Below, in pieces: positions 11,178 through 63,247 of a DNA stretch of 64,000 nt. The notes under the pieces were generated by a model. It was not told the DNA's origin. It made no database searches and was given only the letters and a program-made list of their open reading frames with translations. Both the position numbers and the translations under genes were made by a program. The stretch's first letter is position 1; each line of letters starts with the position of its first letter. Origin of the DNA: Octopus sinensis (taxonomy: Eukaryota); contig NC_042999.1 of the NCBI RefSeq assembly GCF_006345805.1, forward strand, positions 141,918,001 to 141,982,000. Reading direction: 5' to 3'.

Positions 11178-11723
11178 ATGCAAAGACTAAATAACACGAC
11201 TGCATATAAAACGTCTTCTGGTAATAAAGTTGCGGGAGGTGAATGTAAAAGAAAAGCTATAACGCTTGAAGAGAAGCTAGATGTAATACAGCGTTTTGAA
11301 CGTAATGAAAGAACATGTGATATTGTTCGTGCAACGGGAATAAAAGAGTCTACTCTACGCACCATTAGAGACAATGCCGAAAAAATTAAAGCTAGCTATA
11401 TTGCTGGAACAAGCCTCAGTGCTTGCAAATCTGTAAGATCGCGACCAAGGGAACTTGAGGAGATGGAGCGGCTTTTATGTTTGTGGTTAGAAGATCAATC
11501 AGAAAAACTATCTGGAACAAGCTTTCTCACTATAAAAGAAAAAGCTTTATCAATTTATGAAGACCTGAAGAAGAAAGCCGAAAACCCGGCAATCGTGCCT
11601 GCTTTTAGTGCTAGTAGTGGCTGGTTTGTTGGTTTTAAGAATCGTTATACTTTTTATAATGTGAGGTGTGGTGGTGAAGTTCTTAATACACACGAGGAAC
11701 GTGCTATGACATTTCGTCCTAAG
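11178..11723 (+). CDS. Unit 1 exon 1: Tigger/pogo-derived HTH_psq + CENP-B HTH DNA-binding domain
   Basis: Intact 182 codons: KRKAITLEEKLDVI...ELEEMERLLCLWL...FSASSGWFVGFKNRY. Donor AAG|GTACTG (phase 0) lies just after the HTH; no DDE domain or TIR recognised. Confidence 0.8.
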
Positions 11724-12253
11724 GTACTGTAACACGTATTTCATTAAGACATGTAAATTAAACATTCGTTCACAAATCACTTTTTCCAATACATAATTTT
11801 TCTTTTTTTATTCTTGCACAAAATCGAGACTATTGCTTTATCTCTGTCCCAAAACCGATAAATATATAATCCTTTGTTTGTTCTTTTTATAGAAGCCAAA
11901 TTTGATCGTTATAAAAGTGTATTGCATTAATAATAATATATAATGCAGTAAGGATTTGTTACTACTGACATTATATTTTAAACCTATTTATGGTAAATAT
12001 TACCTTCTAATATCTCATAGTATTTTGACAAGTTTTCCAAAGTGGTTTATCTCTCTCTCTGTCTCTCTATTTCACCATTTCATGCATCATGCATCATGCT
12101 TTTGTGTTCGCGATACACAACACTCGCAGAGTTGATGTTAGAAAATAAAGAGAAATAACTCATCCTGGAAAAGTTGGCAATATAAAGGGATGTCTAAAAG
12201 TAACAATTTCATAGATTAATATCAAAAGTGACAACGACAATTTTTCTTTTCAG

Positions 12254-12693
12254 CCTCTAGCACACCAACAGCGTTCACCTTTGGCTATTTCTGATTTGAA
12301 TCAACCGGTGGAATTCAGTTCATCTGACCAGTTAAAAGTCAATTCTAACAACGATATACAAAAGGCTATTCAACCTTTCAACATGAATGATGTGCATCTT
12401 TCTAGTCGATCTATCATTGATATTGAACAAACTGGGAGATCTTTCGGAGTAAAACCTCGCATGAAACGGCTTCCTAAATTGAAACGCCAATTTGGATCCG
12501 GAGCTAAAGATTTATCAGTGAACAGATCTCATTTATCTCAGAGGCCATCCAACCAAATTAGATCTCATCAGCGATGGATAAAAGAATCTACTGGTAATTC
12601 TTCTGTTGGAGAGCAGCATTTTGACGTAGTTTTAAATAAAAATTCTGTAGAATACAATTCAAAAGTACCAAAAATTAACAGCAATTCAATAGC
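12254..12693 (+). CDS. Unit 1 exon 2: low-complexity basic linker
   Basis: Acceptor TTTTCTTTTCAG|CCT (phase 0), open frame PLAHQQRSPLAISD...NSIA, donor GC|GTAAGT (phase 2). Confidence 0.8.
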
Positions 12694-12940
12694 GTAAGTG
12701 TCTTAAAAACATTTTTTTTTCTTTCAAAGAGAAATCTACTTTTCGTTTTGTGTGTATAAAATGACAAATTGTTTTATCTTAATGTGTAACATTTCACTTT
12801 TATATAATACAGATGATATTTTCTGTTAGATATATAAACTATCAAATATTTTATTACATAATGTATCAATATTCAGTTTTGATGCATTTTATATTCGAAA
12901 ACATTTCGATTTCATTGATAACAATTTATTTTATTTAAAG

Positions 12941-13121
12941 TCATTCCCTGTCTGATGAAGTCGTAGTTCTTCCACAATCAACTATACCAGCTGTTCAGAA
13001 AGAGAAACGTACTTTAGTTGTACCAAATCACCAAGTAGCAGTAATGTCCAATCTATTCTCTATGTGGAAAGTTGGGCGTTTGTGTGACTCGTATATTAGT
13101 AATGGTACCACAAATGTAATG
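12941..13121 (+). CDS. Unit 1 exon 3: BTB/POZ N-terminal half
   Basis: Acceptor TTTAAAG|T completes the phase-2 codon. HSLSDEVVV...VPNHQVAVMSNLFSMWKVGRLCDSYISNGTTNVM; donor ATG|GTATGT (phase 0). Confidence 0.9.
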
Positions 13122-13861
13122 GTATGTATGTTATAATTGTTTATCCCTTTTACTCAGTATAAAATTTACATTTTACAATACTAATGAATCATTAAAGATA
13201 TATTTATAATATTGGTACAGTAAAATAAGCTGGTATAATTTAATATGTCAGAATTCTGATCTAGTTCAAAAAAGAAAGTTATGGATGTCTATGTCATTGA
13301 AATAACATGTTGACGGAAAGATCAGTAGTTCAAAATACTATCTAGTGTCTCTTAAGTCTCAATGACAATTTTCAGTTAGATGTCATTAGAAGATGCAAGT
13401 GCCACAAGTAGTAAGTATACTGTGTAATAAATAACTTGTTGTTCTGAGTCTAAATCTTCTTATTGGTAAAACATGCAAAAGAATAACATTCCTATCCAAT
13501 ACTGGAAAATATCTGTGATTTCAAATCTGAGTAAAATTGCTGCATACTTTACCTACTACTTGGGATGTTTCTCAGCCAGACAATATACACAAGTATTTAT
13601 GTGGTAGGATCTAACTGAAATTAAATTTAAGTTCCATTTCTTAAATGCTCTTCTCTCGGTTTTGTCAATATCAATGATGGATCAACTAGAAAGATGCACA
13701 TCATTCATGTTGAAAGGTTGAATAGCCTTTTGTATATTGTTGTTGACTTTTAACTGGTCAGATGAACTGAATCTTTAAAAAATGTGTGCATTGTAGAGAA
13801 TTTCAAATAGCATTTAGCAATATATAAAGCATGTTTTTACCACATTTATTTTATCTTTCAG

Positions 13862-14899
13862 GTTCATAAAATGGTTTTGGGAGCTGTGTGTCCAAAAGTA
13901 TTGCCCATTCTATATAACACCTCAAGTAGTTTGTTTCCTAAAGTGACATTTCCAAGTTCAGTCAGTAAAGAAGCACTTTTAGCATTTGCAGAATACATGT
14001 ACAGTGGTGTGTTAGATCTGAATGAAGATATTCTAGTGCAGCTGAAAACTATTGGTGAGAGATTAGATATGAAAGATTTTGAACAACTTTGTAGTAATGA
14101 ATTGAACAAAGCTAAGACTAAAGATATTTTATCAGCTGTGGTGGAACCTTTGTTGGCAGAACCTTGTTCTTTATCAGGATTACTCCCTTCCAGAACACAT
14201 GGAGACTCTAATGAGGTTCAGAACTCTATGTTAATGAAGATACTTGGAAATATTTACAGCAATAATAGCATGCAAACTGATGTTCCTGTTACCATTGCAT
14301 CAACATCTGCATCCAGTTCTTCTTCTGTTTCTGATGTAAGGTCTGCAGAAAATATGGCTACAGACCAGATTGTTGATATCAAAACTGAAGTGGAATCAGA
14401 AATAGAGCCTGCAACAAACCACAACTCTCTACAATTAAAAATGGAACCGTGTAGTCCTGGTGAAAATCAATATAGTATTCAAGAAGAATTATTCATGGAT
14501 ATTAGCAACATTACTTCCAATAATAATCTTCATCTAACACCTGGTACCAGTGCCACTTCTGGAAATATCATCAATAACCAGTATAGAAATGATCTAAATA
14601 TGGATTCCAATGATATCATCAATATATCTGATATCCCTCAATCTGAAGAGACTTGTTTATCCCAGCATACTGAAGATTGTGATAAAGATACTGATAATCA
14701 GAAAGAACTACAGTTAATTTCAGTAACATCTGCCACAGGGAATATAAGTGAAGACAGTCTCAGTAATAATTCTGATTTGATAGAGATCTCCAGTACCATA
14801 TGTACAGAACCCCCACCAACATCAAATTCTAGACCATACCCTGTAAGTTTATTTTCTGTGAATGGCAGTAAAATTCCAACTACATTACCAGATAGCTGA
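13862..14899 (+). CDS. Unit 1 terminal exon: BTB C-half plus disordered S/N/T-rich tail
   Basis: Acceptor TCTTTCAG|GTT. VHKMVLGAVCP...EALLAFAEYMYSGVLDL...LDMKDFEQLC is typical of BTB; stop TGA ends at 14899. Spliced CDS totals 2205 nt. Confidence 0.9.
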   Translation, partial: VHKMVLGAVCPKVLPILYNTSSSLFPKVTFPSSVSKEALLAFAEYMYSGVLDLNEDILVQLKTIGERLDMKDFEQLCSNELNKAKTKDILSAVVEPLLAEPCSLSGLLPSRTHGDSNEVQNSMLMKILGNIYSNNSMQTDVPVTIASTSASSSSSVSDVRSAENMATDQIVDIKTEVESEIEPATNHNSLQLKMEPCSPGENQYSIQEELFMDISNITSNNNLHLTPGTSATSGNIINNQYRNDLNMDSNDIINISDIPQSEETCLSQHTEDCDKDTDNQKELQLISVTSATGNISEDSLSNNSDLIEISSTICTEPPPTSNSRPYPVSLFSVNGSKIPTTLPDS

Positions 14900-21934: not shown

Positions 21935-21959
21935 GTTGTTCAAGTAAAAAAAAAAAAAA

Positions 21960-27936: not shown

Positions 27937-28366
27937 ATGGGGCGGTTCAAGAAATACCTTAATGAAACTGAAAAGCAAGAAGCAAAAAAAGTGCGAGAAA
28001 GAGAAAGACGTGCAAATGAAACAAATGATGAGAGACTTGAAAGACTAAGAAAGCTGTCTTTCAATGCACAGAAGAGACGAGCTGAAGAAACATCAGAAGA
28101 GAGAAAACAGAGGCTTAGAAGATTGTCTCAGAATGAATTGAAAAGAAGAGCCAAAGAAACGAAAGAGGAAAGATATGAAAGACTTAGGAAACTTGCTCAA
28201 TATGCAAGGAACAGACGTGCTACTGGGTCAAAGAATCATAACACTCGACAGGGTAAAAAAATTCAAGAAGAAAAGCAAAATGCTAATGGCTACATTAAAG
28301 TCAATCTTTTAAAGTATTATGATGTCCAAGAATTCCATCATCAGGAGGAGATGCAACATAACCCTG
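27937..28366 (+). CDS. Unit 2 exon 1 (coding part): STPR-type 23-aa repeat DNA-binding domain
   Basis: Three exact 23-aa repeats ETxxERxxRLRxLxxxxxxRRAx (28018-28224), like Bombyx FMBP-1 STPR. Upstream acceptor TTTGAAG| at 27927; donor CCTG|GTATTT (phase 1). Confidence 0.8.
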
Positions 28367-29037: not shown

Positions 29038-29260
29038 GAAATAATATATCTCGCTTAAAAACATCAAGACTTGATTGTGCCTCAACTCTTCAATTGCATC
29101 AAACTCATGCTAACAATGTGCAAAATCTTAATGAAATGAGTTCATCACAATGGAAAAGGAAAGCCTCTGAAGCAGCTACAATTCGGATAGAAGATGTAAC
29201 CCCAGACACAAACTTCAAACAAACAAATTCAAAAGCCTCAAAAACAAGAAGATCAACATC
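29038..29260 (+). CDS. Unit 2 exon 2: linker (missed by the ORF track)
   Basis: TTTCACAG|GA; open frame (G)NNISRLKTSRL...KASKTRRST; donor TC|GTAAGT. Phase 1 in, phase 2 out. Confidence 0.8.
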
Positions 29261-31388: not shown

Positions 31389-31566
31389 TCATTCAATGAC
31401 TGATGAAGTCATAGTTTTCCCACAATCAGCTGTGTCTCCAGTTCAAGAAAGACATGTTTTAGTGGTTCCAAATCATCAAACAGCAGTAATGTCTAATCTG
31501 TTTTCTCTATGGAAAGCACGGCGCCTCTGTGACTCATATATTAGTAATGGTACCATAAATGTAATG
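31389..31566 (+). CDS. Unit 2 exon 3: BTB N-half
   Basis: TTTACAG|T; HSMTDEVIVF...VPNHQTAVMSNLFSLWKARRLCDSYISNGTINVM|GTATGT. Confidence 0.9.
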
Positions 31567-34495: not shown

Positions 34496-35506
34496 ATTCA
34501 TAAAATGGTTTTAGGAGCTGTGTGTCCAAAACTACTGCCAGTTCTCCATCATTCATCAAAAGGTTCATTCCCCAATGTGGTCTTTCCAAGTTCAGTCAGT
34601 AAAGAAGGACTTTTAGCATTTGCAGAATACATGTACAGCGGCATTTTAGATCTGAATGAAGAAATTCTAGTCCAACTGAAGACTATTGCTGAAAAATTAG
34701 AAATGAAAGATTTTGAAGATCTTTGTTGTAAGGAATTGAACAAAGCTAAGACAAAAGATATTTTATCTGGTGTAGTGGAACCTTTGTTGGCAGAACCTTG
34801 TTCTTTGTCAGGATTATTCCCTTCCAGAACCCAAGGAGATCCTAATGAGGTTCAGAATTCTATGTTTATGAAGTTATTTAGAAATAATTATAGCAATATT
34901 AATATGCAAGCTGATGTTTCTGTCACCACAACTTCAGTTTCTGATGTAAGGTCTGCAGAAAATATGGTTACAGACCAGATTGTTGACATCAAAACTGAAG
35001 TGGAACCAGTAATACAGGCTGCAACAAAGTACAACTCTCTTCAGTTAAAAATAGAACCCTGTAGTCTTGGAGAAAGTCAAAATAGTATTCAAGAAGAACT
35101 GTGTATTGATATTGGTAACATTACTGCAATTAATAATGATGTTCAGTTAAAGCCTGCTGCCAGTACCACTTCTGGAAAGGTCATCAATAGGGACAATGAC
35201 TTTGGAGTTTCTCATTCAAACAAACATCTGGATTCCAGTGATGTCATCTATATATCTGAAGACACTTGTTTATCGCAGCATTCAGAAAATTGTGATAATG
35301 ATACTGATGATCAGGATGAAGTACAGCTAATTTCAGTAACATCTGTAACAGGCAATATAATTGAAGACAATCTCAGCAATAATTCTGATTTGGTAGAGAT
35401 CTCAAGTACGCTGCCTACAAATACAAAGTGGCTGCAAACATCAAATTCTAAACCATGTCCTGTTAATTTATTTTCTGTGAATGACAGTGGATATTCAACT
35501 CTATAG
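34496..35506 (+). CDS. Unit 2 terminal exon: BTB C-half plus tail
   Basis: TTTTCAG|ATT CAT AAA ATG; paralog of 13862-14899. Spliced CDS totals 1842 nt. Confidence 0.9.
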   Translation: MHKMVLGAVCPKLLPVLHHSSKGSFPNVVFPSSVSKEGLLAFAEYMYSGILDLNEEILVQLKTIAEKLEMKDFEDLCCKELNKAKTKDILSGVVEPLLAEPCSLSGLFPSRTQGDPNEVQNSMFMKLFRNNYSNINMQADVSVTTTSVSDVRSAENMVTDQIVDIKTEVEPVIQAATKYNSLQLKIEPCSLGESQNSIQEELCIDIGNITAINNDVQLKPAASTTSGKVINRDNDFGVSHSNKHLDSSDVIYISEDTCLSQHSENCDNDTDDQDEVQLISVTSVTGNIIEDNLSNNSDLVEISSTLPTNTKWLQTSNSKPCPVNLFSVNDSGYSTL

Positions 35507-39166: not shown

Positions 39167-40200
39167 CGGTAGGGTTCTCATGTACGAACAATTCTTTAAA
39201 CAAACATCGAATAACGAACGATTTTTCCGAAGAAAATTAAACTCGCTTAACGAGCTAAAATTTGATTAACGAAGCACGAACAGACTACGCACGCATATGT
39301 GAGTGGTAGAACGTTTACGAACGGTACGCTAAATGAATAAATTGTAGTGAATAACGAACGAATAGACTACGCACACATATAAGTAGCTGGGAAGGATATA
39401 CGAACGGTTCGTTAACGTACGCAAATTTTCATATTTCATATAGAAAATATTATTTCTCATTTTTAGCTAAAAAAAATAAAACCATGGATCGACAGAGGCG
39501 AATTAGAAAATCAATTACTATAGAAACTAAGAAAGAAATAATACATAAACATGAAAATGGAGCTAGTGTTAGCAACCTTAGTTTGGAGTACAGAGTGGCA
39601 AAATCAACTATCTGCACCATACTGAAAAACAAATGTAAATTTAAAAATGTTCGGGTAGCTAAGGGAATAACCAAGCTTAGTAAATCGCGTAACAATTTTA
39701 TTGAAGAGATGGAAAATTTACTTTTGGTATGGATTAAAGAAAAAGAAATTGCTCGTGAAAATATAAGTGAATCGATGATTTGTGTAAAAGCCAAACAATT
39801 ATTTGATGATCTTGTAGCGAATTCTCCCAGTGGAAATGATACTGTGCTGGATTTTCTTGCTTCAAAGGGTTGGTTTACCAGATTCCGGAAAAGAAATGGA
39901 TTACATAATGATGTTAAGTGTGATAAGTCTGCTAGTGCAGACCATAAAGTAGCTCGTGAGTACCACTTTTTAAACTTTATGGCTATGAGTGGCTTCGTTT
40001 CACAGCAAAATTTGAACTATGATGAAATGGGGCTTTTTTTTTTTTTTTTTTTTAATAAATTGCCGTTCAGAAGACCCTAGAGCACTTAAAATCATAAGAA
40101 CCGCCTTGGGGTTTGGACGAACCACAAATCACCAGTCATCTTTTCACTGAGTAGTTGTCTGTGGTGTTTTGTCCTACTGTGCCTAAGTACCTTAGGGACA
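39167..40200 (+). mobile_element. Truncated Tigger/pogo element (5' end plus DNA-binding ORF 39484-40080)
   Basis: AACGAAC-rich subterminal region; ORF RKSITIETKKEII...EEMENLLLVWI...FLASKGWFTRFRKR; the DETGLFWKK motif has decayed into a poly-T run. Confidence 0.75.
39484..39955 (+). CDS. Candidate alternative first exon of unit 3: Tigger-derived psq + CENP-B HTH
   Basis: ATG at 39484; consensus donor C|GTGAGT at 39956 just after the HTH, phase 1. In frame with acceptors at 41628 and 44386. Confidence 0.5.
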
Positions 40201-41644: not shown

Positions 41645-42116
41645 ATGCCTAGGCTCAAAAAATACAAGACTGAAGCAGAGCGACGAGCGGTTACACGACA
41701 GCGTGCAAGAATCAAAAGAGCTAATGAAACACCTTTAGAGAGAGATCAAAGATTAATGAATTTGTCTTTGAATGAATGGCATCGGCGAAGAAATGAGACA
41801 TTTGAAGAGAGAAAGGAGAGACTTAAAAGGCTGTCCTTAAATGCACGAAAGAGACGGGCTAAGGAAACGGCAGAAGAGAGAGCAAATCGGCTTCGAAAAC
41901 TATCTGAGAACGTAATGAAAAGACGTGCCGGAGAATCGAGTCAGAAAAGAAACAAAAATACAAACAAGTGTGCTTCAAAGCCAAATTGCCATAACACTCA
42001 AGTGGCTAAAAGGCAGCGGGGCCGAAAGCCGACTGCTAAAGGCATTAAGATCGCTCTGACCAACTGTTATGATGACCAAGAAAAATATTACCTGGAGCAG
42101 ATGCATCAAGATCCTG
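41645..42116 (+). CDS. Unit 3 exon 1 (coding part): STPR-type repeats
   Basis: Three full 23-aa repeats (41726-41932) plus a degenerate fourth. Acceptor TTTCTTAG| at 41627; donor CCTG|GTATCT (phase 1). Confidence 0.8.
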
Positions 42117-42443: not shown

Positions 42444-43554
42444 CACACACCTCGACTTACGACCACAATAAATTTTAAAAATCGATTTTCGGACGTTGGG
42501 CAGCTGCGCGTACGATGACTGGCATCATCTAGCAACGCATGCCTCCCTCAGACCCAGGCATCCACTGCCTGCAACCGTCTCTCACTCAGTCGCTTTCAAG
42601 CATCAGTTGCGTGTGGATTTGTTACAATTGTATCTGAAATACCCCTAAAATGACTGGTAAAAGGAAAATGCTTTCATCTACAGATGCGCCAGCTAAGAAG
42701 TCAAGGAAGGCTATTGATTTAGACTGTAAAATGAAGATTATTCGGCAGTATGAAGACGGAAAGAAGGTGAATACAATAGCACATGACTTGAAGTTATCGC
42801 ATTCCACGGTATCAACAATACTTAAAGACAAAGAAAGAATTCGTGAAGCTGTGAAAAGTTCTGCACCTATGAAGTCTACAATTTTAACTAAACAACGACA
42901 AGGACCCATCCATGAAATGGAGAAATTGTTATTCATGTGGATGAAAGATTTAATACAGAAAAAAACACCCATCAGCCTTCTTACAGTGCAAACAAAGGCT
43001 AGAAGTTTGTTTCAGACTTTAAAATCACGCTCCGGATACGATTACGCACAAGATTTTCAGGCTAGTAAAGGGTGGTTTATGCGTTTTAAAAAAAGATTTG
43101 CTTTGCATAATGTACGTGTCGCAGGAAGTACAGATGAAGGAGCCCAAAAATTCGTTGATAGATTTGACGAAGGTTATCTACCAGAACAAACATTCAACGT
43201 AGACGAAACAGACTTGCTATGGAAACGAATGCCTACTCGTACGTACATACACCAAGGAAAAAAGATGCAGAATTCAATGCTTTTAAGGATAGGTTAGCTT
43301 AGTTGCTTGGTGGTAATGCCGCGGGTTCTAAGCTGAAGCCTTTTCTAATTTGTCATTCGGAAAACCCTTTAATTTTTGTTTATAGTAAAATAGAGTACAT
43401 ATGTATTTTTCATATTATGAACAATAATTATGGATTAAATTTTTGTGTTTTATATTTTTATAACCCGTTTGAATGAAAATAGTGCTGAAAAATATTATTA
43501 ATCCGACATACAACCTGCTAGTCGGAACGAAATTCGGTCGTAAGTCGAGGTGTA
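42444..43554 (+). mobile_element. Internally deleted Tigger with both TIRs, in the unit 3 intron; intact DNA-binding ORF 42650-43297
   Basis: TIRs CACCTCGACTTACGACC (~42448-42464) / GGTCGTAAGTCGAGGTG (43536-43552), TA-flanked. ORF RKAIDLDCKMKII...FQASKGWFMRFKKR...NVDET.L.WKRMP, then a frameshifted DDE start (KDRL.*LLGGNAAG.KLKP). Confidence 0.85.
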
Positions 43555-44385
43555 TATCATATTAATATATCAACTCCGAATGAAAAGTTGTCAAAATACC
43601 ATAGGAATCGTAGAAGTAACAATATGTTCATAAACTTTGCTCAATTTATGTTACATTCTAATATAAATATTGCTACTATGTTCTGATGTAATTTCATCTT
43701 TGATTCGCGGCTGGTGCTATTTGTGTCAACATTCTCGGTATGCATTCTGTCCACTACTAACGAAGGCTTGACTCTCACAGTCTCATGTTGAATGTGGCAT
43801 ACTCCTCAGGGCATAAATAGCTATAACTCTACATTGGATTACGATTCATTGGCAACAGCTTCACTTGCTTTGGAAAATTCAATGAAATTTCCAATTGTTA
43901 TGAATTATAATATCCTATCATTAATTCCTTTCAATAATAGTAAATAATAGATTGAAATATAGATATCTTAATTTGTATTGATTACAAAAATGAGGCATAG
44001 TATCGAATGACGTTGATAGAAGGCTACTACCTTTACCTAATATAAAAACGTTGAACAGCCGTGATTAACGGATTAGACGGCGAGTAGAATGAAGTTTGAA
44101 TAAAAGACCTCTTTGAACTGGTTCATGATACAAATATACATATAAATTCTTAATTTTGATAATGATAAAATGAACGTTGTTGGTTTGGGGAAATAGCAGT
44201 GAAGATGAGCTATATTAATTTTGAGCTTATAGATACAATATATTACACTTTAAAAACAAAATTTACACTAAAATGGGAAATGTGAAGTTTGTGAAAATAG
44301 AGTAATATTTCAAAATACTTGTTTGTTGTTTTCAGTCAGAATAATGTTTATTTGGATGTAACTTGTAACTTTGATGTTTTGACAG

Positions 44386-44596
44386 GAAAATTTGAAGCTC
44401 CCATTGAAAAATCAGAACTTAATTCCATTCAGTCTTCTCAACATTCTGTTGAAACAAAAACATTACAAAAAGTCTCTGTTGAAAATAATGCAAATTTGAA
44501 GCAGCAAACCAAAGCAACAACTAGAGCACAGAGAAACCAATTGATCTCAGTCAACACATCTAATGAAGTGAATTCAAAATTATGCAAAACTAACAG
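44386..44596 (+). CDS. Unit 3 exon 2: linker
   Basis: TTTTGACAG|GA; KFEAPIEKS...SKLCKTN; donor AG|GTGAGA. Phase 1 in, phase 2 out. Confidence 0.85.
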
Positions 44597-44699
44597 GTGA
44601 GATAGAATTTTGTTAACATATGTTATCTGTTTGATTTGAGCAAATGTTCTTAGAGATGTATGCCCTTCCTACAACAAAACATCCAAATAGATGGTAGGA

Positions 44700-46380: not shown

Positions 46381-46980
46381 AAAAAGATTTACCCATATCA
46401 GTGAAACTGAGATTCTGAAAGCACAACATGCCCAACTGTCTCCCCTCCATCACCATTTCTTCCTTAAGACATCCCCACCACTTACCATCATCTCTCTTAA
46501 CTGAACTGTTCTTAGCAGAACTGGTATCTTCTATTAGCTTTTCCCTAATACCACTTATCCTTCTCACTACCTGGAACCATTTTGCTTATTATCTCCATTT
46601 CTCACACACTTTAACCCCTCATCCTACAACAAAAGCCACCTCCCTCTCTACTCTGGTCCCTTTCAGTCAGAAGGGATCCTACTTTTACAAGTTGCATAGT
46701 AACTTCATTAGTGCTGATGCTATGAAAAAATGCACCAAATACACACAGTAAAGGGGCTGGTGTTAGGAAGGGCATCCTGCTATGCAAACTTTGCCATGTC
46801 TGACATTGGAACATGATGCAGTCTTCGGATGTGTTGAATCCTGCAGGCCATCCAACCAATGCCATTGTAGAACATAGACATTAAATGATGATGATATTGA
46901 TTCTGTGTTGTTTGAATTTATTTACATGTTCTAAAATATTTGATGTTACTATTGACTGTTTTATGTTTTTGTATTTGAAG

Positions 46981-47143
46981 TGAAATCTTACTTCATCCAC
47001 AATCAGCTGTACCCCCTGTTCAAGAGAAACGCATTTTAGTGGTTCCAAATCATCAAACAGCAGTGATGTCCAATCTATTTTCCATGTGGAAAGCAGGGCG
47101 TTTGTGTGACTCATACATCAGTAATGGTACTACAACTATAATG
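46981..47143 (+). CDS. Unit 3 exon 3: BTB N-half
   Basis: TTTGAAG|T GAA ATC...VPNHQTAVMSNLFSMWKAGRLCDSYISNGTTTIM|GTAAGT. Confidence 0.9.
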
Positions 47144-48981: not shown

Positions 48982-50031
48982 GTCCATAAAATGGTTTTAG
49001 GAGCTGTGTGTCCAAAATTGCTGCCAATTCTCCATCATTCATCAAAAGGTTCATTCCCTAAAGTGACATTTCCAAGTTCAGTCAGTAAAGAGGGACTTTT
49101 AGCATTTGCAGAATACATGTACAGTGGTGTGTTAGATCTGAATGAAGAAATTCTAGTCCAACTAAAGACTATTGGTGAGAGATTAAGTATGAAAGATTTT
49201 GAACAACTTTGCTGTAATGAATTGAACAAAGCTAAGACAAAAGATATTTTATCAGCTGTGGTGGAACCTTTGTTGGCAGAACCTTGTTCTTTGTCAGGAT
49301 TATTTCCTTCCAGAACACATGGAGACACTAACGAAGTACAAAATTCTATGTTAATTAAGTTGTTTAGAAATAATTACTGCACTAGTAATAACATGCAGCA
49401 TGATGTTCTTGTTAGTACTGGATCTAGTACATCTTCTGATATAAGGACTGAAGAAATTATGACTGCAAATCAGATCATTGACATCCAGAGAGAAGTGGAA
49501 CCAGAGACAGCGTCTGCAACAGACCACAACTCTCTACAGTTAAAAATAGAACCTTATAGTCCTGGTGAAAACCAACATAGTTTTCAAGAAGAATTATGCA
49601 TGGATATTGGTAACACTAGTTCCAATAATAATCATCATCAAACACCTGCTACCAGTGCCACTTCTGCAAATATCATCAATACAGACAATGACTTAACAGT
49701 TACTTATTCAGACAACCAGTATAAAAATGATCTAAATATGGTTTCCTGTGATAGCATCAATATATCTGATACCCCTCAATCTGAAGAGATTTGTTTATCA
49801 CAGCATACAGAAGATTGTGATAAAGATACTGATAATCAGAAAGAACTACGGTTAATTTCAATAACGTCTGTGGCAGGCAATATAAATGAAGACAATCTCA
49901 GCAATAATTCCGATTTGGTAGAGATCTCCAGTACAATGCCTACAAATACAACACAACTGCAAACATCAAATTCTAAACCATACCCTATTAGTTTATTTTC
50001 TGTGAATAACAGTGAATATACAGCTCTATGA
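48982..50031 (+). CDS. Unit 3 terminal exon: BTB C-half plus tail
   Basis: TTTTCAG|GTC CAT AAA ATG; paralog of the other terminal exons. Spliced CDS totals 1896 nt. Confidence 0.9.
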   Translation, partial: VHKMVLGAVCPKLLPILHHSSKGSFPKVTFPSSVSKEGLLAFAEYMYSGVLDLNEEILVQLKTIGERLSMKDFEQLCCNELNKAKTKDILSAVVEPLLAEPCSLSGLFPSRTHGDTNEVQNSMLIKLFRNNYCTSNNMQHDVLVSTGSSTSSDIRTEEIMTANQIIDIQREVEPETASATDHNSLQLKIEPYSPGENQHSFQEELCMDIGNTSSNNNHHQTPATSATSANIINTDNDLTVTYSDNQYKNDLNMVSCDSINISDTPQSEEICLSQHTEDCDKDTDNQKELRLISITSVAGNINEDNLSNNSDLVEISSTMPTNTTQLQTSNSKPYPISLFSVNNSEYTAL

Positions 50032-52810: not shown

Positions 52811-52850
52811 TATATATTGAAATTTTATAGAAATGCCGTTCAAACAGCAC

Positions 52851-54732: not shown

Positions 54733-55228
54733 ATGGCAAGGCCGAGAAAATACAAGACTGAAGCAGAAAAACGAGAAGCCAGGCGACAGCGTGAACGAAT
54801 CAAAAGAGCTAATGAAACACCTTTAGAGAGAGATCATAGACTGATGAAATTATCTTTGAATGAATGGAAACGGCGACGAAGTGAAACTGTTGAACAGAGA
54901 AGTGAGAGACTTAAAAGGCTGTCCTTAAATGCACGGAAGAGACGGGCTAAGGAAACGGCAGAAGAGAGAGCAAATCGGCTTCGAAAACTGTCTGAGAGCG
55001 AAATGAGGAGGCGTGCCAGAGAAACGTCTGAAGAAAGAAAGAGAAGACTTAAGAAACTCGCCGAATATGCAAAGAACAAGCGTACTTCCGAGTCAAATTG
55101 TCCTAATACACAAGTGGCTAAAATGGCGCGAGGCCGAAAGCAGACTGCTAATGGCATTAAGATCACCCTGACCAACTGTTACGATGACCAAGAAAACCAT
55201 TACCTGGAGGAGATGCATCACGATCCTG
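54733..55228 (+). CDS. Unit 4 exon 1 (coding part): AT-hook-like RPRK plus four STPR repeats
   Basis: Four exact 23-aa repeats at 54814-55089; donor CCTG|GTATCT (phase 1); close paralog of 41645-42116. Confidence 0.85.
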
Positions 55229-57895: not shown

Positions 57896-58121
57896 AAAAG
57901 TTTCAAGCTCTTGTTGAAAAGTCAGGACTTAATTCCATTCCCACTTCTCAACTTCGTTGTGTTGAAACAAGAAAATTGCAAAAAGTCTCTGTTGGAATTG
58001 GTGCAAATAGGAAAAAGAAAACCAAAACAACAACCAGAGCACAGAGGAACCAATTGATCTCAGTCTACACTTCTAATAAAGCAAACTCCAAATTATGCAA
58101 AACCAGAACCAATGCAATGTT
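57896..58121 (+). CDS. Unit 4 exon 2: linker
   Basis: TTTTTACAG|AA; KFQALVEKS...KLCKTRTNAM; donor TT|GTGAGT. Paralog of 44386-44596. Confidence 0.85.
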
Positions 58122-59417
58122 GTGAGTATTTTAGATCATCTCCTTTAAAAGTTTACTTTTTCTTATACTAACTAGTGGAGAATTTTTAAAAATTCAACAT
58201 CTCTTATCTATTGGGTTGAGGAATAATTCATGAGCGTTTTTTTTTTCTTTTCAAATTTATTTTAAACAAAATAACTACAATAAATTAATCGATAATATAC
58301 TCTCTGTTGTTGTTTACGACTTCCCCCTATTGTTCAATAAGTTTTGCAATGTCTCGGTGATAGAAATCTCCCAGTCTTGACTCAGAGAATTCGTCCAACC
58401 AAGCCCTCAATTTCATGTCATTATTGAACAATACACCATGCAAAGCAATCAAAAGAGATGAAAATCTGATGGCACCAAGTCTGGAGAGTATGGAGGATGA
58501 GGCAGCTCTTTCTGTTTGATGTTAGGACACACATTGTGTTGCAGAAGAACTCCATTTCGCCTATTCAGTTTTTTTGCTGAATTGCTTTGTTGAGTCACTG
58601 CAGTTGTTGAACGTAGAGCTCTGCATTAAATGTTTGATTGCGCTCAACCAGTTCATAACAAATTGTGCCTTCCCAGTCACCACCATACACACCACATGGT
58701 CTTTCAAGGATGAAGGTCTTGTTTTGCTTGTAGAGTCGCTTGTTTGTCGGAGCTGAGCCATTTATTTTGCTGCTTCATTTTGATGTAAAGGCACCATTTT
58801 CTATTACTAGTGATAATGTGGTAAAGAAAACGTTGTTTGTGACTATATGTTGAGCGATGTCGAGCAAACAAACTGGTGGCAATTGTGGAGCATTGATTTT
58901 TGTTGTTTTTACTCAAAGTGTATGGTACCCAAGTGCTGAGTTTCTAAACTATTGAGTGAAGGTGGTTCACCACTTTTTTTTCATCACATTCCATTTGCTC
59001 CACCAATTCTCTGGTTGTTTGACGTGGATTTTTATGAAGAAGTTGATTCAATTGCTCTTCATTGAACTCAATTGGTTGACTGGTGTGTGATCCATCCTTG
59101 AGGTCAAAATTCCCATTTTTGAAACATGAAAACCAATGGCAGGCAATATATTGAGACATTACTTCTCCATACACAGCACAAATCTCACAAGCAGCTTCGG
59201 CAGCCTTAACACCTTGATTAAATGCAAAAAGCAAATGGTGTCGAAAATGCTTATGTTTGTCCACTTGACATTCCATTTTAATGATCTGAAGATACACAAA
59301 AATCAACAAAAGTAAAAAAAATCAAAATACAGTAGTCCCCCGGTATTACATTCCTAGAGCATGGTCCATAAAATGCCTACAAATGTCAAAATATAATGTA
59401 AAATATTATATATATCA

Positions 59418-59810: not shown

Positions 59811-59839
<29 letters not shown>

Positions 59840-59892
59840 TTTATATATTCATTTTGCAAGATTCTTGATGTGATTTCCTGTGTTAAAACAGA

Positions 59893-60269
59893 TATTGTTG
59901 CATTTAGGGATGGTCGTGTTGCCAATTTAGCCAATAAAAACACACACACTATATATTTGGTGTTCACTTGCTTCAGCTTTATTTTATATAAATTTTATTT
60001 AGGCCAGAGTTCTTTCGTCACACTTCTGTGACCTCATCAGTGGTCCTTTACTTTCTTCTTTCTTTTCCGTGTGTCTCTCCTTACTAATGATCTGCCATTT
60101 TGTATTCCAATAGGTCACAGAGGTGTGAGGTCACAGAAGTGTGATGAAAGAACTCTGGCCGAAATACAATTCATATAAAATAAAGCTGAAGCAAGTGAAG
60201 ACCAAATATATTGTGCGTGTGTTTTTATTGGCTAAACTGGCAACATGACCATCCCCAAATACAACAATA
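59893..60269. repeat. Inverted repeat (arms ~144 bp, ~90-bp spacer) with a hammerhead-like motif
   Basis: Left arm 59893-60036 is the reverse complement of right arm 60126-60269. Confidence 0.9.
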
Positions 60270-63069
60270 AATATACATAGATACATACATACATATATAT
60301 ATATATACATACATATATATTATATTTAATAATAATTTTATAAAAAATTAAGTAAAATGTACGGTTACTCACCAATAATGAATGATATTGATTTAAGACG
60401 ATGATGAAAATAATGAGGGTAATGACTGCACAGCAAAGAAGATTTAAAGCTCTTCAGATGTTTTAGGGGATGTCGTATCTTCATGCAAGGCTTTTTTGGT
60501 GATCTTGAGGAACATTGTGGTGGGAAGTTGCTGTCGTTTCTTCTTGGTGGTGAGGAGAATTTTATATGTCTGCAATCCTGGCATTTTTAAATTGGAGAGA
60601 CCGAACCATATAGGGATCCCATGCTCCTGCTTTCCCTTGGAATTCCTTTGCTGTCCTTAAAAGATCAGACAGACATTTGATTGTCAGGCTCACCCCATCT
60701 CCCCCTTCCTCTGGATCTGGTGCTTCCTCCTCCTCTTTGCTGGCAGACATTAACTCCAACAAATCTTCATCTATCAGGGTTTCAGAGTAGGCATCAATGA
60801 GGTCCTTGACCTCATCTTGTGTAATGTCAAAACCTTCACCACCAAGTACCTTTGCCAGTTTCCTCTCATTGTTGAAAGCCTCATGCTGAATATCTGCAGG
60901 TGAGAAGCCCCCGTAGTCCTGGACACACTCTGGCCATACCTTCTTCCAGCATGCGATGAGGGTTTCTTTTGTCATTTCTTTAAGAGCAGCGTGGATGACT
61001 GACAGGCACATTGTGTTCGTGAACTTCTCATCCAAATCCATTGCATCCACAGTGTTGGAGAGTGTGTAGAATGCATGGATCATCCCTTGATCTGTAGGCT
61101 GGATGAAGGAGGTGGTATTGGCAGGGAAGATCTCAACTTGAACTTCCTTGTGGTTCAAATCCAAAGAGTGACCACCAGCAACACCTTGAGTTCCATGCAA
61201 ACATTTTGGAAGTATACTTTGGCTTGAGGGATGAAGTATTGGTGGAAGCAATTCAAAGTTAGACCTTTGGTAATCCAGGCCTTGGGGTTGCGCATCCAGT
61301 GGACAGGCAGCAGATTTTTATTCTTATTTTTGAAGGCCCTCAGGTTCATGGATTTGTAGATAAGTCCTGGTTTCATCATGAAGCCAGCAGCATTGCCACA
61401 CGTAATTAGCATCACTTTGTCCTTCTGTGCCTTAAACGCTGGGGCTCTGGCTTCATCCTTCATGATCTATGTTCTGGAAAGCATCTTCTTCGAGAACAAG
61501 CCAGTCTTGTCCATACTAAAAACCTGTTCCAGCTTGTATCCCTTGTCCTCAATAATCTACCTGAAAGTCTCAAGGTACTTCTCGGTGACTTTTTTGTCAG
61601 CTGATGCTGTCTCTCCATGCAGAGAAACACACTTTATTTTAAACCATTTCTGGAAACGGTCAAACCATTCCTTGCTGGTTTGAAAATCTTTGGGCTCCAA
61701 TGTTGTCAGTGATCTTGGTTGCGGTTTTTTGGTGCCCTCTGCTCTGTCTCCTCTGTGAAACTGCTGGTATAATTTCTGCACTTTCTTGTGGGTGATGTTA
61801 CCACTCAAGGAGATGTTTTTCTTCTTGCAGTCAATGATCCACAATACTAAGGCAGATTCCTTCCTGACAAAGCGCTTATTTCTCACTATCGTTATCTTTT
61901 TGGCACTTTCACTGAAACTTACTGCTATGGTAGTCCTGATCACCACCTTGTTCTTCTTTATTTAGCGTATGATGCTTTCATTGACAGCATAATAACGACC
62001 TACTGCAGCATAACTTTTACCTTCCTGGAACATGTCCAGCAGTTGTACCTTCTCATGGAGCGTCATAACAGCTTTCTGGTGCTTAGATTCACTGCCAGAA
62101 GTCTTAGAAGGTGTAGGGCATTTTGGGCAGCATCTTAGGGCTTTAATAACATGCTGCAAAAAATGCAGTACTCAGCAAAATACTGGAGATAACTTGATGC
62201 AGTTTTTCCAAAAAAAGAAACCTACAGAAAAATCTTCTTTGCATCTAATATGCACAAACCACAAATGGGAGATTGAGCAGAGATTAAAAATAATCATGGT
62301 TTTGAAAAATTTAGTTTGTATTACCACTAGATACAGTAATCTATAATATAATAATAAGAGAGAGTGAGTGAGTGAGAGAGGGGGGAGGGAGGGAGGGACC
62401 AGTAAGTGACCTAATTTCAATGATGCTATATTGGCTCATGACCTTAAAAATTATTCTGTTGAAATAAATATTGTGTATGATCAAATGTAGTAATGATTTA
62501 AAAAAATACACTAATAGTTGCTATACTAATTAGCAAGCTTTGAAGGAAAGCAGGAATAAGAGATACAAGATACAGTGTACTCGTATCTAAAAAAAAATCA
62601 AGCGACATAATGCATGGCTATTCTAATCAAAGGTATCTTCAGCTGTGAAGGGGCATCCAATAAACTGACAAATATGGTATCTTATTATTAATAGTTTAGC
62701 CTTAAAAAGTGTGGAAAAGTATATATTGGCACAAAAAATGCCATAAAAAATCACGGATGATATTTATGATTCCGCAAATAACCGGGCCCACAAATTTGAG
62801 AAAAATGCTCATGAATTTATTCCTCAACCAACTATTTGGTTGGAACAAATGTTCTTAGAGTTGAATGCCCTTATAGTTGAACACCCATACAAGAAGTAAG
62901 AATGGAACCCTTTTGTCAGTCAAGCAAACAGAAGCAAATGGTGATGTGTGCATTGTCCAGAGATCTTTAACAAACGCTTTGTATTGTTTGAATTTATTAA
63001 TGGGTATACTTAATGTTACTGTTGACTGTTATCTAACTAGTTATGTGTTTTATGTTTTTGTATTTGAAG

Positions 63070-63247
63070 CCATTCTGTCTCCAGTGAAATCTTACTTCAT
63101 CCACAATCAGATATACCTCCTGTTCAGGAGAAACGCATTTTAGTGGTTCCAAATCATCAAACAGCAGTGATGTCCAATCTATTTTCCATGTGGAAAGCAG
63201 GGCGTTTGTGTGACTCGTACATCAGTAATGGTACTACAAATATATTG
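63070..63247 (+). CDS. Unit 4 exon 3: BTB N-half (terminal exon expected beyond the window)
   Basis: TTTGAAG|C CAT TCT GTC...VPNHQTAVMSNLFSMWKAGRLCDSYISNGTTNIL|GTATGT. Confidence 0.9.

What the first reader, a model, noticed from the sequence alone, without database searches (positions are those of the whole stretch)
11178..63247. Tandem array of BTB genes with swappable N-terminal DNA-binding cassettes
Seen: four same-strand units share two BTB exons with an identical intron position (M|V/IHK), but the first coding exon differs (Tigger HTH in unit 1; STPR repeats in units 2-4). All junctions phase correctly, giving 734, 613 and 631 aa products plus a partial fourth. Known: in ZBTB, pipsqueak, lola and mod(mdg4) proteins the BTB is N-terminal and the DNA-binding part follows; tetrapod KRAB-transposase fusions are a precedent for capturing transposon DNA-binding domains. 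Inference: this is a lineage-specific, reversed-order, modular TF family that exchanges DNA-binding domains on a conserved BTB scaffold. I do not know of a described STPR-BTB or HTH-then-BTB array, but I could not search.
Basis: partly seen in the sequence, partly recalled or inferred. Interest (0 to 1): 0.92.

Follow-up and report, generated by a model that had tools for sequence, protein, structure and literature searches.

The report
Octopus BTB genes with alternative DNA-binding heads
This octopus region holds four neighbouring genes of a cephalopod-only family in which one shared BTB "body" is joined by splicing to different DNA-binding "heads", several taken from transposons, giving an unusually clear view of how new gene regulators are assembled.

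Summary
All 11 junctions are GT..AG and in frame. The spliced products are 100% identical to Octopus sinensis RefSeq models: LOC115209549 X2 (734 aa), LOC115209332 (613), LOC115209617 X2 (631) and LOC115209550 (640, cut by the window end). Pfam confirms CENP-B_N+HTH_Tnp_Tc5+BTB in unit 1 and STPRs+BTB in units 2-4.

Unit 3 has three mutually exclusive first coding exons: pogo HTH-a, STPR and Tigger HTH-c. Unit 1 has two: THAP+CG-1-like, or pogo HTH. Start codons, donors and exon order are kept in O. bimaculoides.

Close relatives of this BTB, with one unexamined exception, are cephalopod proteins. They carry THAP, FLYWCH, pogo HTH, ZSWIM3_N/FAR1, CG-1, DUF3504 or STPR ahead of the BTB. Cuttlefish-type cDNA contigs show alternative 5' heads on one body.

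Constraint is strong on unit 1, clear on HTH-a, moderate on STPR and weak on HTH-c. HTH-c lies in a young 3'-truncated Tigger insertion.

One paper noted BTB on Octopus CENPB/THAP genes. STPR-BTB, the array and the alternative first exons appear undescribed. No octopus RNA was available here, and the transcription-factor role is inferred.

The parts
1..702 (+). Unit 1 (LOC115209549), alternative 5' part: CG-1-like exon of the THAP isoform. The exon starts upstream of the window. Donor at 702|GT, phase 0, spliced to 12254.
   Evidence: 100% match to residues 88-321 of the 875-aa THAP+BTB model P0011. Pfam CG-1 scores 19.4 bits, below the cutoff of 23.5. It is 40% identical (E 1e-23) to Argonauta P0044, whose CG-1 hit passes at 33.5 bits. 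omega 0.04 vs O. bimaculoides.
11178..11723 (+). Unit 1 alternative first coding exon: pogo/Tigger-type HTH (CENP-B_N + HTH_Tnp_Tc5), phase 0 donor.
   Evidence: Identical to XP_036357331.1. omega 0.08, P=3e-5. At most ~43% identical to any transposase fragment retrieved with the HTH-c query.
12254..12693 (+). Unit 1 exon 2 (linker), shared by both unit 1 isoforms. Bases 12313-12439 pair with intron 3.
12941..13121 (+). Unit 1 exon 3 (first part of the BTB).
13862..14899 (+). Unit 1 exon 4 (rest of the BTB plus acidic/Ser-rich tail with psiKxE and PYPxxLF motifs, and the stop codon).
27937..28366 (+). Unit 2 (LOC115209332) first coding exon: STPR, three 23-residue repeats.
   Evidence: omega 0.31, P=0.005.
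29038..29260 (+). Unit 2 exon 2 (linker).
31389..31566 (+). Unit 2 exon 3 (first part of the BTB).
34496..35506 (+). Unit 2 exon 4 (rest of the BTB plus tail).
39484..39955 (+). Unit 3 (LOC115209617) alternative first coding exon HTH-a (isoform X3): pogo-type HTH, phase 1 donor, spliced to 44386.
   Evidence: Pfam HTH_Tnp_Tc5 9e-10 and CENP-B_N 1.5e-5. omega 0.18, P=0.002. ATG and GT are conserved in O. bimaculoides.
41645..42116 (+). Unit 3 alternative first coding exon STPR (isoform X2), phase 1 donor.
   Evidence: omega 0.48, P=0.06.
42650..43238 (+). Unit 3 alternative first coding exon HTH-c (isoform X1): Tigger HTH plus the first residues of the DDE domain, phase 1 donor.
   Evidence: 61-76% identical to Tigger1-like transposase fragments of other animals. 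omega 0.43.
42510..43549 (+). 3'-truncated Tigger copy that contains the HTH-c exon. It starts ~140 nt before the ATG and runs ~310 nt past the donor.
   Evidence: 80-85% nucleotide identity to a dispersed copy on another O. bimaculoides chromosome (L010). It lies in a stretch without homology in the paralogous unit 4 intron: homology stops at 42205 and resumes at 43569.
44386..44596 (+). Unit 3 exon 2 (linker), the common acceptor for all three first exons.
46981..47143 (+). Unit 3 exon 3 (first part of the BTB).
48982..50031 (+). Unit 3 exon 4 (rest of the BTB plus tail).
   Evidence: omega 1.36 vs O. bimaculoides.
54733..55228 (+). Unit 4 (LOC115209550) first coding exon: STPR, four 23-residue repeats.
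57896..58121 (+). Unit 4 exon 2 (linker).
63070..63247 (+). Unit 4 exon 3 (first part of the BTB). Exon 4 lies beyond the window end.

Best explanation
The window (Octopus sinensis, or a near-identical genome) holds four same-strand tandem paralogues of a BTB gene family so far found almost only in cephalopods. Each gene has a constant 'body': a linker exon, two BTB exons, and a long acidic/Ser-rich tail with psiKxE and PYPxxLF motifs. Each body is spliced to a first coding exon that encodes a DNA-binding 'head'. Gene models (shown): unit 1 uses either THAP+CG-1-like or a pogo HTH. Unit 3 uses pogo HTH-a, STPR or Tigger HTH-c. Units 2 and 4 use STPR. Within a gene the alternative heads have their own ATG and donors of the same phase, so they are mutually exclusive first exons, presumably each with its own promoter (inferred). 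Origin (shown or strongly implied): the THAP/CG-1-like form is the old one, shared with cuttlefish. STPR-BTB predates the Octopus-Argonauta split. The HTH heads are 5' fragments of pogo/Tigger transposase genes cut off at the start of the DDE domain. HTH-c is a recent Tigger insertion into intron 1 of unit 3, made after the unit 3/unit 4 duplication and before the O. sinensis/O. bimaculoides split. Function (inferred): the proteins are sequence-specific transcription regulators. The head chooses the DNA target. The ZBTB-like BTB dimerises, possibly between isoforms and paralogues, and together with the tail recruits co-regulators. One locus therefore yields several factors with different targets and the same effector. 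This mirrors Drosophila lola and mod(mdg4), built with variable first exons as in protocadherin or UGT1A clusters.
For: Junctions and frames. Identity to RefSeq isoforms X1-X3. Domains. The same array and order, the same three heads in unit 3, and all ATG and GT conserved in O. bimaculoides. Selection against O. bimaculoides (NG86): U1_HTH 0.08, CG-1-like 0.04, HTH-a 0.18, U2_STPR 0.31; pooled HTH 0.25 (P=3e-7); pooled STPR 0.46 (P=0.002). Pooled nonsynonymous rates are also below the noncoding rate of 0.060. STPR exons stay open with 23-residue periodicity across paralogues diverged to dS 0.3-1.6, with omega 0.26-0.43. Family-wide modularity, almost entirely cephalopod. RNA-level precedent: the cDNA-like Logan contigs L005 and L008 match at 97.6% from one point onward but carry ZSWIM3_N versus THAP 5' parts. 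L009 is a FLYWCH+BTB cDNA. BTB type: the AF2 model has the beta1-alpha1 extension, and its best PDB matches are ZBTB9, BCL6 and PLZF. TE origin of HTH-c.
Against: No octopus RNA-seq, Iso-Seq or CAGE data could be examined. The isoforms rest on Gnomon models in two species. The only Logan fragment of these units (P0027) is unspliced. U3_STPR, U3_HTHc and U4_STPR are only weakly constrained between the two Octopus species (omega 0.48, 0.43 and 0.76). The dN of U3_STPR is not distinguishable from the noncoding rate. U3 exon 4 has omega 1.36, so unit 3 may be relaxed or fast-evolving. No DNA binding, dimerisation or regulatory activity has been tested. The tail has no recognisable domain. Sequence-level PDB hits include Cul3 adaptors (gigaxonin, KLHL) as well as ZBTB proteins.
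Confidence: 0.72

Rival explanations
1. The transposon-derived heads, above all HTH-c, are not functional protein parts. A Tigger fragment in the intron, or upstream pogo remnants, is transcribed from its own promoter and occasionally spliced to exon 2 through a cryptic donor. The annotation pipelines turned this noise into isoforms. Only the STPR (units 2-4) and THAP (unit 1) forms would be real products.
For: HTH-c lies in a young truncated Tigger copy, 85% identical in DNA to a dispersed copy, that is absent from paralogous unit 4. Its omega is 0.43 and its dN (0.042) is close to the noncoding rate. Its donor sits inside the transposase reading frame. No RNA evidence was available here.
Against: U1_HTH (omega 0.08, P=3e-5) and HTH-a (0.18, P=0.002) are clearly constrained and have no close transposon relatives. 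All three HTH exons keep their ATG, frame and GT donor in O. bimaculoides, and the same isoforms were modelled there independently. Pogo HTH+BTB proteins recur at other loci of the family (P0048, P0185).
Confidence: 0.15
2. The proteins are Cul3 ubiquitin-ligase substrate adaptors or chromatin-bound degradation factors rather than transcription factors. The BTB would bind Cul3, and the N-terminal domains would tether the ligase to DNA or chromatin.
For: The best sequence match in the PDB is gigaxonin, and KLHL3 and KLHL26 are also hit. Keap1 BTB appears among the structural matches.
Against: There is no BACK, 3-box, Kelch or MATH domain. The best structural matches are ZBTB9, BCL6, PLZF and Miz1. 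The partner domains are classic transcription-factor or transposase DNA-binding domains.
Confidence: 0.08
3. The BTB units are themselves parts of a mobile element, with the BTB as a 'transposon component' as worded by Mukherjee & Moroz 2023. The array would then be a cluster of element copies rather than host genes.
For: PMC10027918 describes Octopus CENPB and THAP genes as derived from 'BTB/POZ transposable elements'. Several family members carry DDE_3 or integrase-like pieces.
Against: The four units sit in the same order, with the same introns, at orthologous positions in O. bimaculoides. The BTB exons are under purifying selection (pooled exon 3 omega 0.12). The only dispersed copy found matches the Tigger part alone. 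BTB is not a known transposon-encoded domain (my own knowledge).
Confidence: 0.03

Closest known systems
Drosophila lola, mod(mdg4), fruitless, broad, tramtrack (BTB genes with alternative DNA-binding exons)
   Same: One BTB-coding module is combined by splicing with mutually exclusive exons that encode different DNA-binding domains. Cassettes are arranged in series at one locus. mod(mdg4) uses FLYWCH, a domain that also occurs as a head in this cephalopod family.
   Different: The arrangement is a mirror image. Here the variable exons are first coding exons at the 5' end and the BTB is internal or C-terminal. The likely mechanism is alternative promoters rather than alternative 3' exons or trans-splicing. 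The heads are STPR, pogo HTH and THAP rather than C2H2. The BTB is ZBTB-like; no TTK-type motif was looked for here, and the TTK type is reported to be arthropod-specific (PMC11426971).
Host-transposase fusion genes (KRABINER, POGK and similar; Cosby et al., bioRxiv 10.1101/2020.05.07.082677)
   Same: A transposase DNA-binding domain is joined to a host regulatory domain by splicing, with the parts on separate exons. HTH-c shows the birth stage: an intronic insertion that has become an exon.
   Different: The host partner is BTB, not KRAB or SCAN; BTB is not mentioned in that paper. The transposon supplies the first coding exon, its ATG and a donor inside the transposase frame, and the catalytic domain is lost. 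This is an invertebrate lineage.
Pipsqueak / Bric-a-brac type BTB-HTH(Psq) proteins
   Same: They pair a BTB with a pogo-related helix-turn-helix DNA-binding domain. The neighbouring gene's isoform P0185 even hits the Brinker DNA-binding domain.
   Different: The domain order is reversed, and the heads are CENP-B_N+HTH_Tnp_Tc5 pairs taken directly from Tigger/pogo transposases.
Clustered protocadherin and UGT1A loci (variable first exons, constant downstream exons)
   Same: Several alternative first coding exons lie in series upstream of shared constant exons, with matching splice phase.
   Different: The variable exons encode unrelated DNA-binding folds rather than paralogous copies of one domain. 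There are only two or three per gene. Promoter choice is untested.
FMBP-1 (Bombyx) and other STPR proteins
   Same: Tandem 23-residue STPR repeats, four in unit 4 as in FMBP-1 (PMC4856987 abstract). FMBP-1's STPR domain binds along the DNA major groove.
   Different: No BTB is described with STPR: a full-text search for STPR+BTB found only unrelated plant and other papers. Here the STPR is an N-terminal head on a BTB body.
Octopus CENPB/THAP 'TE-derived TFs' of Mukherjee & Moroz 2023 (PMC10027918); ZBTB11 (integrase zinc finger then BTB; PMC12062965)
   Same: The first paper records that most O. bimaculoides CENPB and THAP genes carry BTB/POZ. These are very probably members of this family. 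ZBTB11 is a vertebrate precedent for a TE/virus-derived domain N-terminal to a BTB.
   Different: Neither paper describes STPR-BTB, the tandem array, alternative first exons or restriction to cephalopods. The first treats the BTB as a transposon component. ZBTB11 keeps C-terminal zinc fingers.

Membership tests
BTB/POZ, long-form (ZBTB-type) transcription-factor BTB | BTB fold recognised by profile | tested here: met
   PF00651 E 8e-8 to 1e-8, 33-36 bits against a cutoff of 20.5, in units 1-3.
BTB/POZ, long-form (ZBTB-type) transcription-factor BTB | N-terminal beta1-alpha1 extension of dimeric BTBs, and structural similarity to ZBTB BTBs | tested here: met
   The AF2 model (pLDDT 73) has E9-11 and H15-28 before the core. 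The best Foldseek PDB matches are ZBTB9, BCL6 and PLZF (prob 1.0, TM 0.5-0.67).
BTB/POZ, long-form (ZBTB-type) transcription-factor BTB | BTB at the N-terminus followed by C-terminal C2H2 zinc fingers | tested here: not met
   The BTB lies at residues 258-472. The DNA-binding domain is N-terminal. There are no zinc fingers and no Pfam domain in the tail.
BTB/POZ, long-form (ZBTB-type) transcription-factor BTB | Homodimerisation and co-repressor recruitment | not testable with these tools
   Needs biochemistry.
STPR DNA-binding domain (FMBP-1 type) | Tandem 23-residue repeats recognised by PF21107 | tested here: met
   41-61 bits against a cutoff of 27. Repeat starts are spaced exactly 23 residues apart: three repeats in units 2 and 3, four in unit 4.
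STPR DNA-binding domain (FMBP-1 type) | Sequence-specific DNA binding | not testable with these tools
   Known for FMBP-1 only (PMC4856987).
Domesticated pogo/Tigger transposase DNA-binding domain (CENP-B, TIGD, POGK kind) | CENP-B_N plus HTH_Tnp_Tc5 pair | tested here: met
   All three HTH heads hit both models above the cutoff.
Domesticated pogo/Tigger transposase DNA-binding domain (CENP-B, TIGD, POGK kind) | Catalytic DDE domain lost | tested here: met
   No DDE_1 hit in the products. The HTH-c and HTH-a donors sit at the first residues of the DDE region. Transposase similarity ends by ~43470 (protein level) or ~43549 (DNA level).
Domesticated pogo/Tigger transposase DNA-binding domain (CENP-B, TIGD, POGK kind) | Orthologue at the syntenic position in another species | tested here: met
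   O. bimaculoides L001 and L002 carry all three HTH heads in the same order.
Domesticated pogo/Tigger transposase DNA-binding domain (CENP-B, TIGD, POGK kind) | Purifying selection on the captured domain | tested here: inconclusive
   Met for U1_HTH (0.08) and HTH-a (0.18). Weak for HTH-c (0.43, P=0.03; dN near the noncoding rate).
lola / mod(mdg4)-type BTB loci | Common BTB exons joined to mutually exclusive DNA-binding exons | tested here: met
   Met at the level of gene models in two species, with matching phases. RNA reads were not examined.
lola / mod(mdg4)-type BTB loci | BTB encoded by the common 5' exons, with the variable exons at the 3' end | tested here: not met
   The order is reversed: the variable exons are first coding exons.
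Host-transposase fusion genes (Cosby et al.) | Transposase-derived and host domains on separate exons joined by splicing | tested here: met
Host-transposase fusion genes (Cosby et al.) | Expression of the fusion transcript | not testable with these tools
   No octopus transcript contigs for these units were found. P0027 is unspliced.

The most novel reading that the evidence does not exclude
The array, together with at least one further family gene ~22 kb upstream and other loci on the chromosome, could be a cephalopod counterpart of the vertebrate KRAB-ZNF / KRAB-transposase system. A BTB repressor body would keep recruiting transposase DNA-binding heads (Tigger, pogo, THAP/P-element, FLYWCH, MULE/FAR1, Crypton-linked DUF3504) through new first exons. 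Each new isoform would be aimed at the dispersed copies of its cognate transposon, either silencing them or wiring them into host regulatory networks. Because units 2-4 share splice phases (phase 1 after the head, phase 0 inside the BTB), heads and bodies of neighbouring units might also be combined by read-through splicing. The O. vulgaris model P0003 (unit 3 exons 1-3 plus unit 4 exon 4) hints at this. That would make the whole array one combinatorial locus.
Probability: 0.2. Interest if true: 0.88.

Novelty: new variant of a known kind. Interest (0 to 1): 0.68.

Why it matters
Coleoid cephalopods are known for lineage-specific expansions of regulatory genes, but how new transcription factors arise in them is poorly documented. 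This locus shows, in 64 kb, every stage of assembling a factor from parts. There is an old, strongly constrained head (THAP/CG-1-like and pogo HTH on unit 1). There is a duplicated and diverging head (STPR on units 2-4). And there is a head caught at birth (a Tigger fragment in intron 1 of unit 3 that already has an ATG, a donor and the right phase). It extends 'transposase capture' from vertebrate KRAB/SCAN genes to an invertebrate BTB family. It also shows that the lola/mod(mdg4) logic of one BTB with many DNA-binding domains evolved independently in the opposite orientation. In practice it yields a small set of natural isoforms with the same effector and different heads, well suited to testing how DNA-binding specificity alone redirects a regulator.

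Tried and rejected
(1) Octopus transcripts in the protein collection: the clusters of the four units hold only genome-derived models plus one Logan fragment, P0027. That fragment is exon 2 with intron sequence on both sides, so it is unspliced and uninformative.
(2) Origin of the STPR head: a search with the unit 4 STPR exon returned a single Logan ORF (P0270, STPR only). The word index handles this low-complexity sequence poorly, so whether STPR came from a host gene or a mobile element remains open.
(3) Further hidden heads in the window: tblastn with THAP, FLYWCH, ZSWIM3_N, DUF3504, Brinker-HTH, DDE_3 and STPR-like heads from other family members found nothing beyond the known exons.
(4) HTH heads in Argonauta: the Argonauta STPR-BTB locus with 10 kb on each side has the STPR exon and body but no HTH exon.
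(5) Pfam on the C-terminal tail: no domain. The psiKxE and PYPxxLF motifs are pattern matches only.
(6) Literature search by LOC identifiers: no paper.
(7) Whole unit as a mobile element: rejected on synteny and selection.
(8) One Pfam call failed on a size limit and was not repeated.
(9) NG86 dS (about 0.09) exceeds the noncoding divergence (0.06), so omega values may be somewhat too low. I therefore also compared dN with the noncoding rate.

Full report
OBSERVATION. Joining the exons gives uninterrupted frames of 734, 613 and 631 aa, plus a 300-aa partial fourth.

A protein search showed that these products are 100% identical to RefSeq models of Octopus sinensis. They are LOC115209549 isoform X2 (734 aa), LOC115209332 (613), LOC115209617 isoform X2 (631) and the first 300 residues of LOC115209550 (640 aa; its last exon lies beyond the window). 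The O. vulgaris copy of unit 2 differs by one residue, so the window is O. sinensis or something indistinguishable from it.

Pfam confirms the domain calls, all above the curated cutoffs. Unit 1 has CENP-B_N, HTH_Tnp_Tc5 and BTB. Units 2 and 3 have STPRs and BTB. The partial unit 4 has STPRs. The STPR exons contain three (units 2 and 3) or four (unit 4) repeats spaced exactly 23 residues apart. The intron inside the BTB is in phase 0 at the same codon in all units. Unit 4 reads L|VHK rather than M|VHK.

RefSeq gives LOC115209617 (unit 3) three isoforms that differ only in the first coding exon. Mapping them to the window locates a pogo-type HTH exon at 39484-39955 (X3), the STPR exon at 41645-42116 (X2) and a Tigger HTH exon at 42650-43238 (X1). 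Each has its own ATG and a GT donor in phase 1, and all three join the same acceptor at 44386.

Unit 1 also has two heads. One is the HTH exon at 11178-11723. The other is an upstream THAP part followed by an exon that occupies window 1-702. Both end in phase 0 and join 12254 (proteins P0011 and P0029).

The 1-702 exon is CG-1-like. Pfam CG-1 scores 19.4 bits, below the cutoff. It is nevertheless 40% identical (E 1e-23) to an Argonauta paralogue whose CG-1 hit passes at 33.5 bits. The three HTH heads are only 31-39% identical to each other, so they are not recent copies of one another.

CONSERVATION. O. bimaculoides has the same four genes in the same order on one chromosome: LOC106872000, LOC106872009, LOC106872008 and LOC106872012. 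Unit 3 there has the same three heads in the same order, and the same isoform sets are annotated. All start codons and GT donors of the alternative first exons are conserved. A fifth, more distant family gene (LOC106872006 / LOC115209547) lies about 22 kb upstream of unit 1. Its isoforms carry THAP, Brinker-like plus Tc5 HTH, CG-1 or DDE_3 before the BTB.

SELECTION. Noncoding divergence between the two species is 0.060 over 20.9 kb. Nei-Gojobori estimates are:
- U1_HTH: 0.08 (P=3e-5)
- CG-1-like exon: 0.04
- HTH-a: 0.18 (P=0.002)
- U2_STPR: 0.31 (P=0.005)
- U3_STPR: 0.48 (P=0.06)
- HTH-c: 0.43 (P=0.03)
- U4_STPR: 0.76 (not significant)

Pooled, the HTH heads give 0.25 (P=3e-7) and the STPR heads 0.46 (P=0.002). 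Both pooled nonsynonymous rates are below the noncoding rate. Between paralogues the STPR exons have diverged to dS 0.3-1.6 while staying open and periodic, with omega 0.26-0.43.

For U3_STPR and HTH-c taken alone, constraint is weak. The tail exon of unit 3 evolves fast (omega 1.36).

Divergence among paralogues is mosaic. Exon 3 of units 3 and 4 differs by dS 0.06-0.09, and the BTB part of exon 4 of units 2 and 4 by 0.07. The heads are far more diverged. This points to gene conversion of the shared body.

ORIGIN OF THE HEADS. HTH-c is 61-76% identical to Tigger1-like transposase fragments from shrimps, bichirs, bats, Argonauta and O. bimaculoides. At the DNA level, window 42510-43549 is 80-85% identical to a dispersed Tigger copy on another O. 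bimaculoides chromosome.

The homologous segment starts about 140 nt before the ATG. It continues about 310 nt beyond the exon's donor, where the transposase frame decays. Nothing of the rest of the DDE domain remains. The segment falls within the stretch where homology to the paralogous unit 4 intron is missing, between 42205 and 43569. It is present at the orthologous site in O. bimaculoides.

HTH-c is therefore a 3'-truncated Tigger insertion. It was made after the unit 3/unit 4 duplication and before the split of the two Octopus species, and it now offers an ATG and a donor of the right phase. HTH-a and U1_HTH have no relative closer than about 43% among the transposase fragments retrieved with the HTH-c query. 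They look like older, settled captures.

The Argonauta STPR-BTB locus has no HTH head within 10 kb. The source of STPR could not be traced.

THE FAMILY. A full HMMER scan of 1.84 billion representative proteins, using the BTB plus tail as query, found only 160 hits at E<=1e-3. In most of the best ~45 the BTB is internal.

Among 42 members, Pfam finds these domains alongside the BTB: THAP (8 members), STPRs (4), HTH_Tnp_Tc5/CENP-B_N (4), FLYWCH (4), DUF3504 (3), CG-1 (3), ZSWIM3_N/FAR1 (2) and DDE_3 (1). In the members scanned individually these lie N-terminal to the BTB.

Of the 20 hits whose source I looked up, 14 carried a source name. Thirteen of those are Octopus, Argonauta or Acanthosepion; the other is an emu protein. 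The remaining six are unnamed Logan contigs. Many of the named genes sit on the same chromosome and have up to seven annotated isoforms.

Three Logan contigs carry uninterrupted ORFs and are therefore cDNA-like. They encode ZSWIM3_N+CG-1-like+BTB (L005), THAP+CG-1-like+BTB (L008) and FLYWCH+BTB (L009). L005 and L008 match at 97.6% from one nucleotide onward and are unrelated upstream of it. This is transcript-level evidence for alternative 5' heads in the decapodiform orthologue of unit 1.

In a neighbour-joining tree of the BTB region, the cuttlefish-type gene falls outside the four octopus units. In a tree of the STPR heads, the Argonauta head groups with those of units 3 and 4.

HOW IT PROBABLY WORKS. 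The BTB is of the long, dimeric type. The AF2 model (mean pLDDT 73) has beta1 and alpha1 ahead of the core, and its best PDB matches are ZBTB9, BCL6, PLZF and Miz1. By sequence, gigaxonin, ZBTB17 and PLZF score similarly, around 1e-6. The tail has no known domain. It does keep psiKxE sites (LKIEPYSP or LKMEPCSP in units 1, 3 and 4) and, in most members examined, a near-terminal PYPxxLF motif.

I infer that each head directs the same dimerising, co-regulator-recruiting body to a different set of sites. Alternative promoters would decide which head is made. Dimerisation between isoforms and paralogues would add combinations. The structural steps are shown by sequence, gene models and conservation. 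DNA binding, dimerisation and regulatory output are inferred.

COMPARISON WITH WHAT IS KNOWN. The logic matches Drosophila lola and mod(mdg4), but the orientation is reversed, so the locus fails that family's defining layout. The gene architecture resembles the variable first exons of protocadherin and UGT1A clusters. The capture process matches host-transposase fusion (bioRxiv 10.1101/2020.05.07.082677), a paper that does not mention BTB. Here, however, the transposon supplies the first exon.

ZBTB11 is a vertebrate case of a TE/virus-derived domain placed before a BTB (PMC12062965). Mukherjee & Moroz 2023 recorded that most O. bimaculoides CENPB and THAP genes carry BTB/POZ, and they interpreted the BTB as a transposon component (PMC10027918). 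That is the only prior mention I found. No paper pairs STPR with BTB, none names these loci, and the broader searches found nothing on the array or its alternative first exons.

VERDICT. This is a new variant of a known kind: BTB regulators with interchangeable DNA-binding exons, and transposase capture. It is annotated only as 'uncharacterized' and has been glimpsed once in the literature. Interest is 0.68. The main gap is the lack of octopus RNA evidence and of any functional test.

Noticed in passing
window 12313-12439 (unit 1 exon 2) and 13652-13772 (intron 3); O. bimaculoides L002 38387-38479 / 39708-39800: A coding segment of exon 2 is reverse-complementary to an intronic segment ~90 nt upstream of the exon 4 acceptor (30 nt at 100% plus 93 nt at 92%). 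The pair is kept in O. bimaculoides at 94%, and the MFE fold of 12300-13790 pairs the arms into a ~125-bp duplex. It is a candidate exon/intron dsRNA, either an ADAR editing substrate or a splicing control.
   Followed up: partly
It is very strongly constrained (omega 0.04). The Pfam CG-1 hit is below threshold here but above it in an Argonauta paralogue. A CAMTA-type CG-1 domain next to THAP and BTB is unusual.
   Followed up: partly
window 46981-47143 / 63070-63247 and the exon 4 regions (also O. bimaculoides L001, L003, L004): Paralogue divergence is mosaic. BTB exon 3 of units 3 and 4 differs by dS 0.06-0.09, and the BTB part of exon 4 of units 2 and 4 by 0.07. The STPR heads differ by dS 0.3-1.6. 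This suggests gene conversion of the shared body exons.
   Followed up: partly
window 48982-50031: The unit 3 tail exon has 36 nonsynonymous against 7 synonymous differences from O. bimaculoides (omega 1.36), unlike unit 1 (0.10). This indicates either relaxed constraint or positive selection.
   Followed up: no
window 41645-47143 plus unit 4 exon 4 (outside the window): An O. vulgaris gene model (P0003) joins unit 3 exons 1-3 to the last exon of unit 4 (98.5% identical to O. sinensis unit 4). Phases are compatible across units 2-4. It is either a read-through transcript or an annotation chimera.
   Followed up: partly
window 58944-59309 (-) and 60562-62108 (-): Unit 4 intron 2 (4.9 kb) carries two insertions: a mariner fragment (Mos1 HTH_48) and a frameshifted Tigger with HTH_Tnp_Tc5 and DDE_1 pieces. 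The Tigger is only ~26% identical to HTH-c.
   Followed up: partly
window 1729-2869, 4102-4226, 36827-37631: Satellites with 58-66-nt units (some rows report 29-, 123- or 199-nt periods), up to about 6 copies, generate overlapping spurious ORFs on both strands.
   Followed up: no
window 32582-33087 / 33164-33669: A 506-nt inverted repeat (81% complementary, 76 nt apart) lies in unit 2 intron 3 and overlaps an ORF similar to the PHD-finger ORF at 4923-5243(-). It is probably two head-to-head retroelement fragments.
   Followed up: no
protein P0060 (Dromaius novaehollandiae, 3997 aa): This is the only non-cephalopod among the named close relatives of this BTB. It is a giant emu protein with five matching BTB stretches (E 3e-22). 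It could reflect contamination, misassembly or convergence.
   Followed up: no
O. sinensis LOC115209901 (P0021) and the O. vulgaris model P0020, elsewhere on the same chromosome: A more distant paralogue has an isoform with an Arg/Glu-rich repeat N-terminus. The O. vulgaris model (P0020) is named 'stress response nst1-like'. The N-terminus looks STPR-like by eye but does not reach Pfam STPRs at 1e-3.
   Followed up: no
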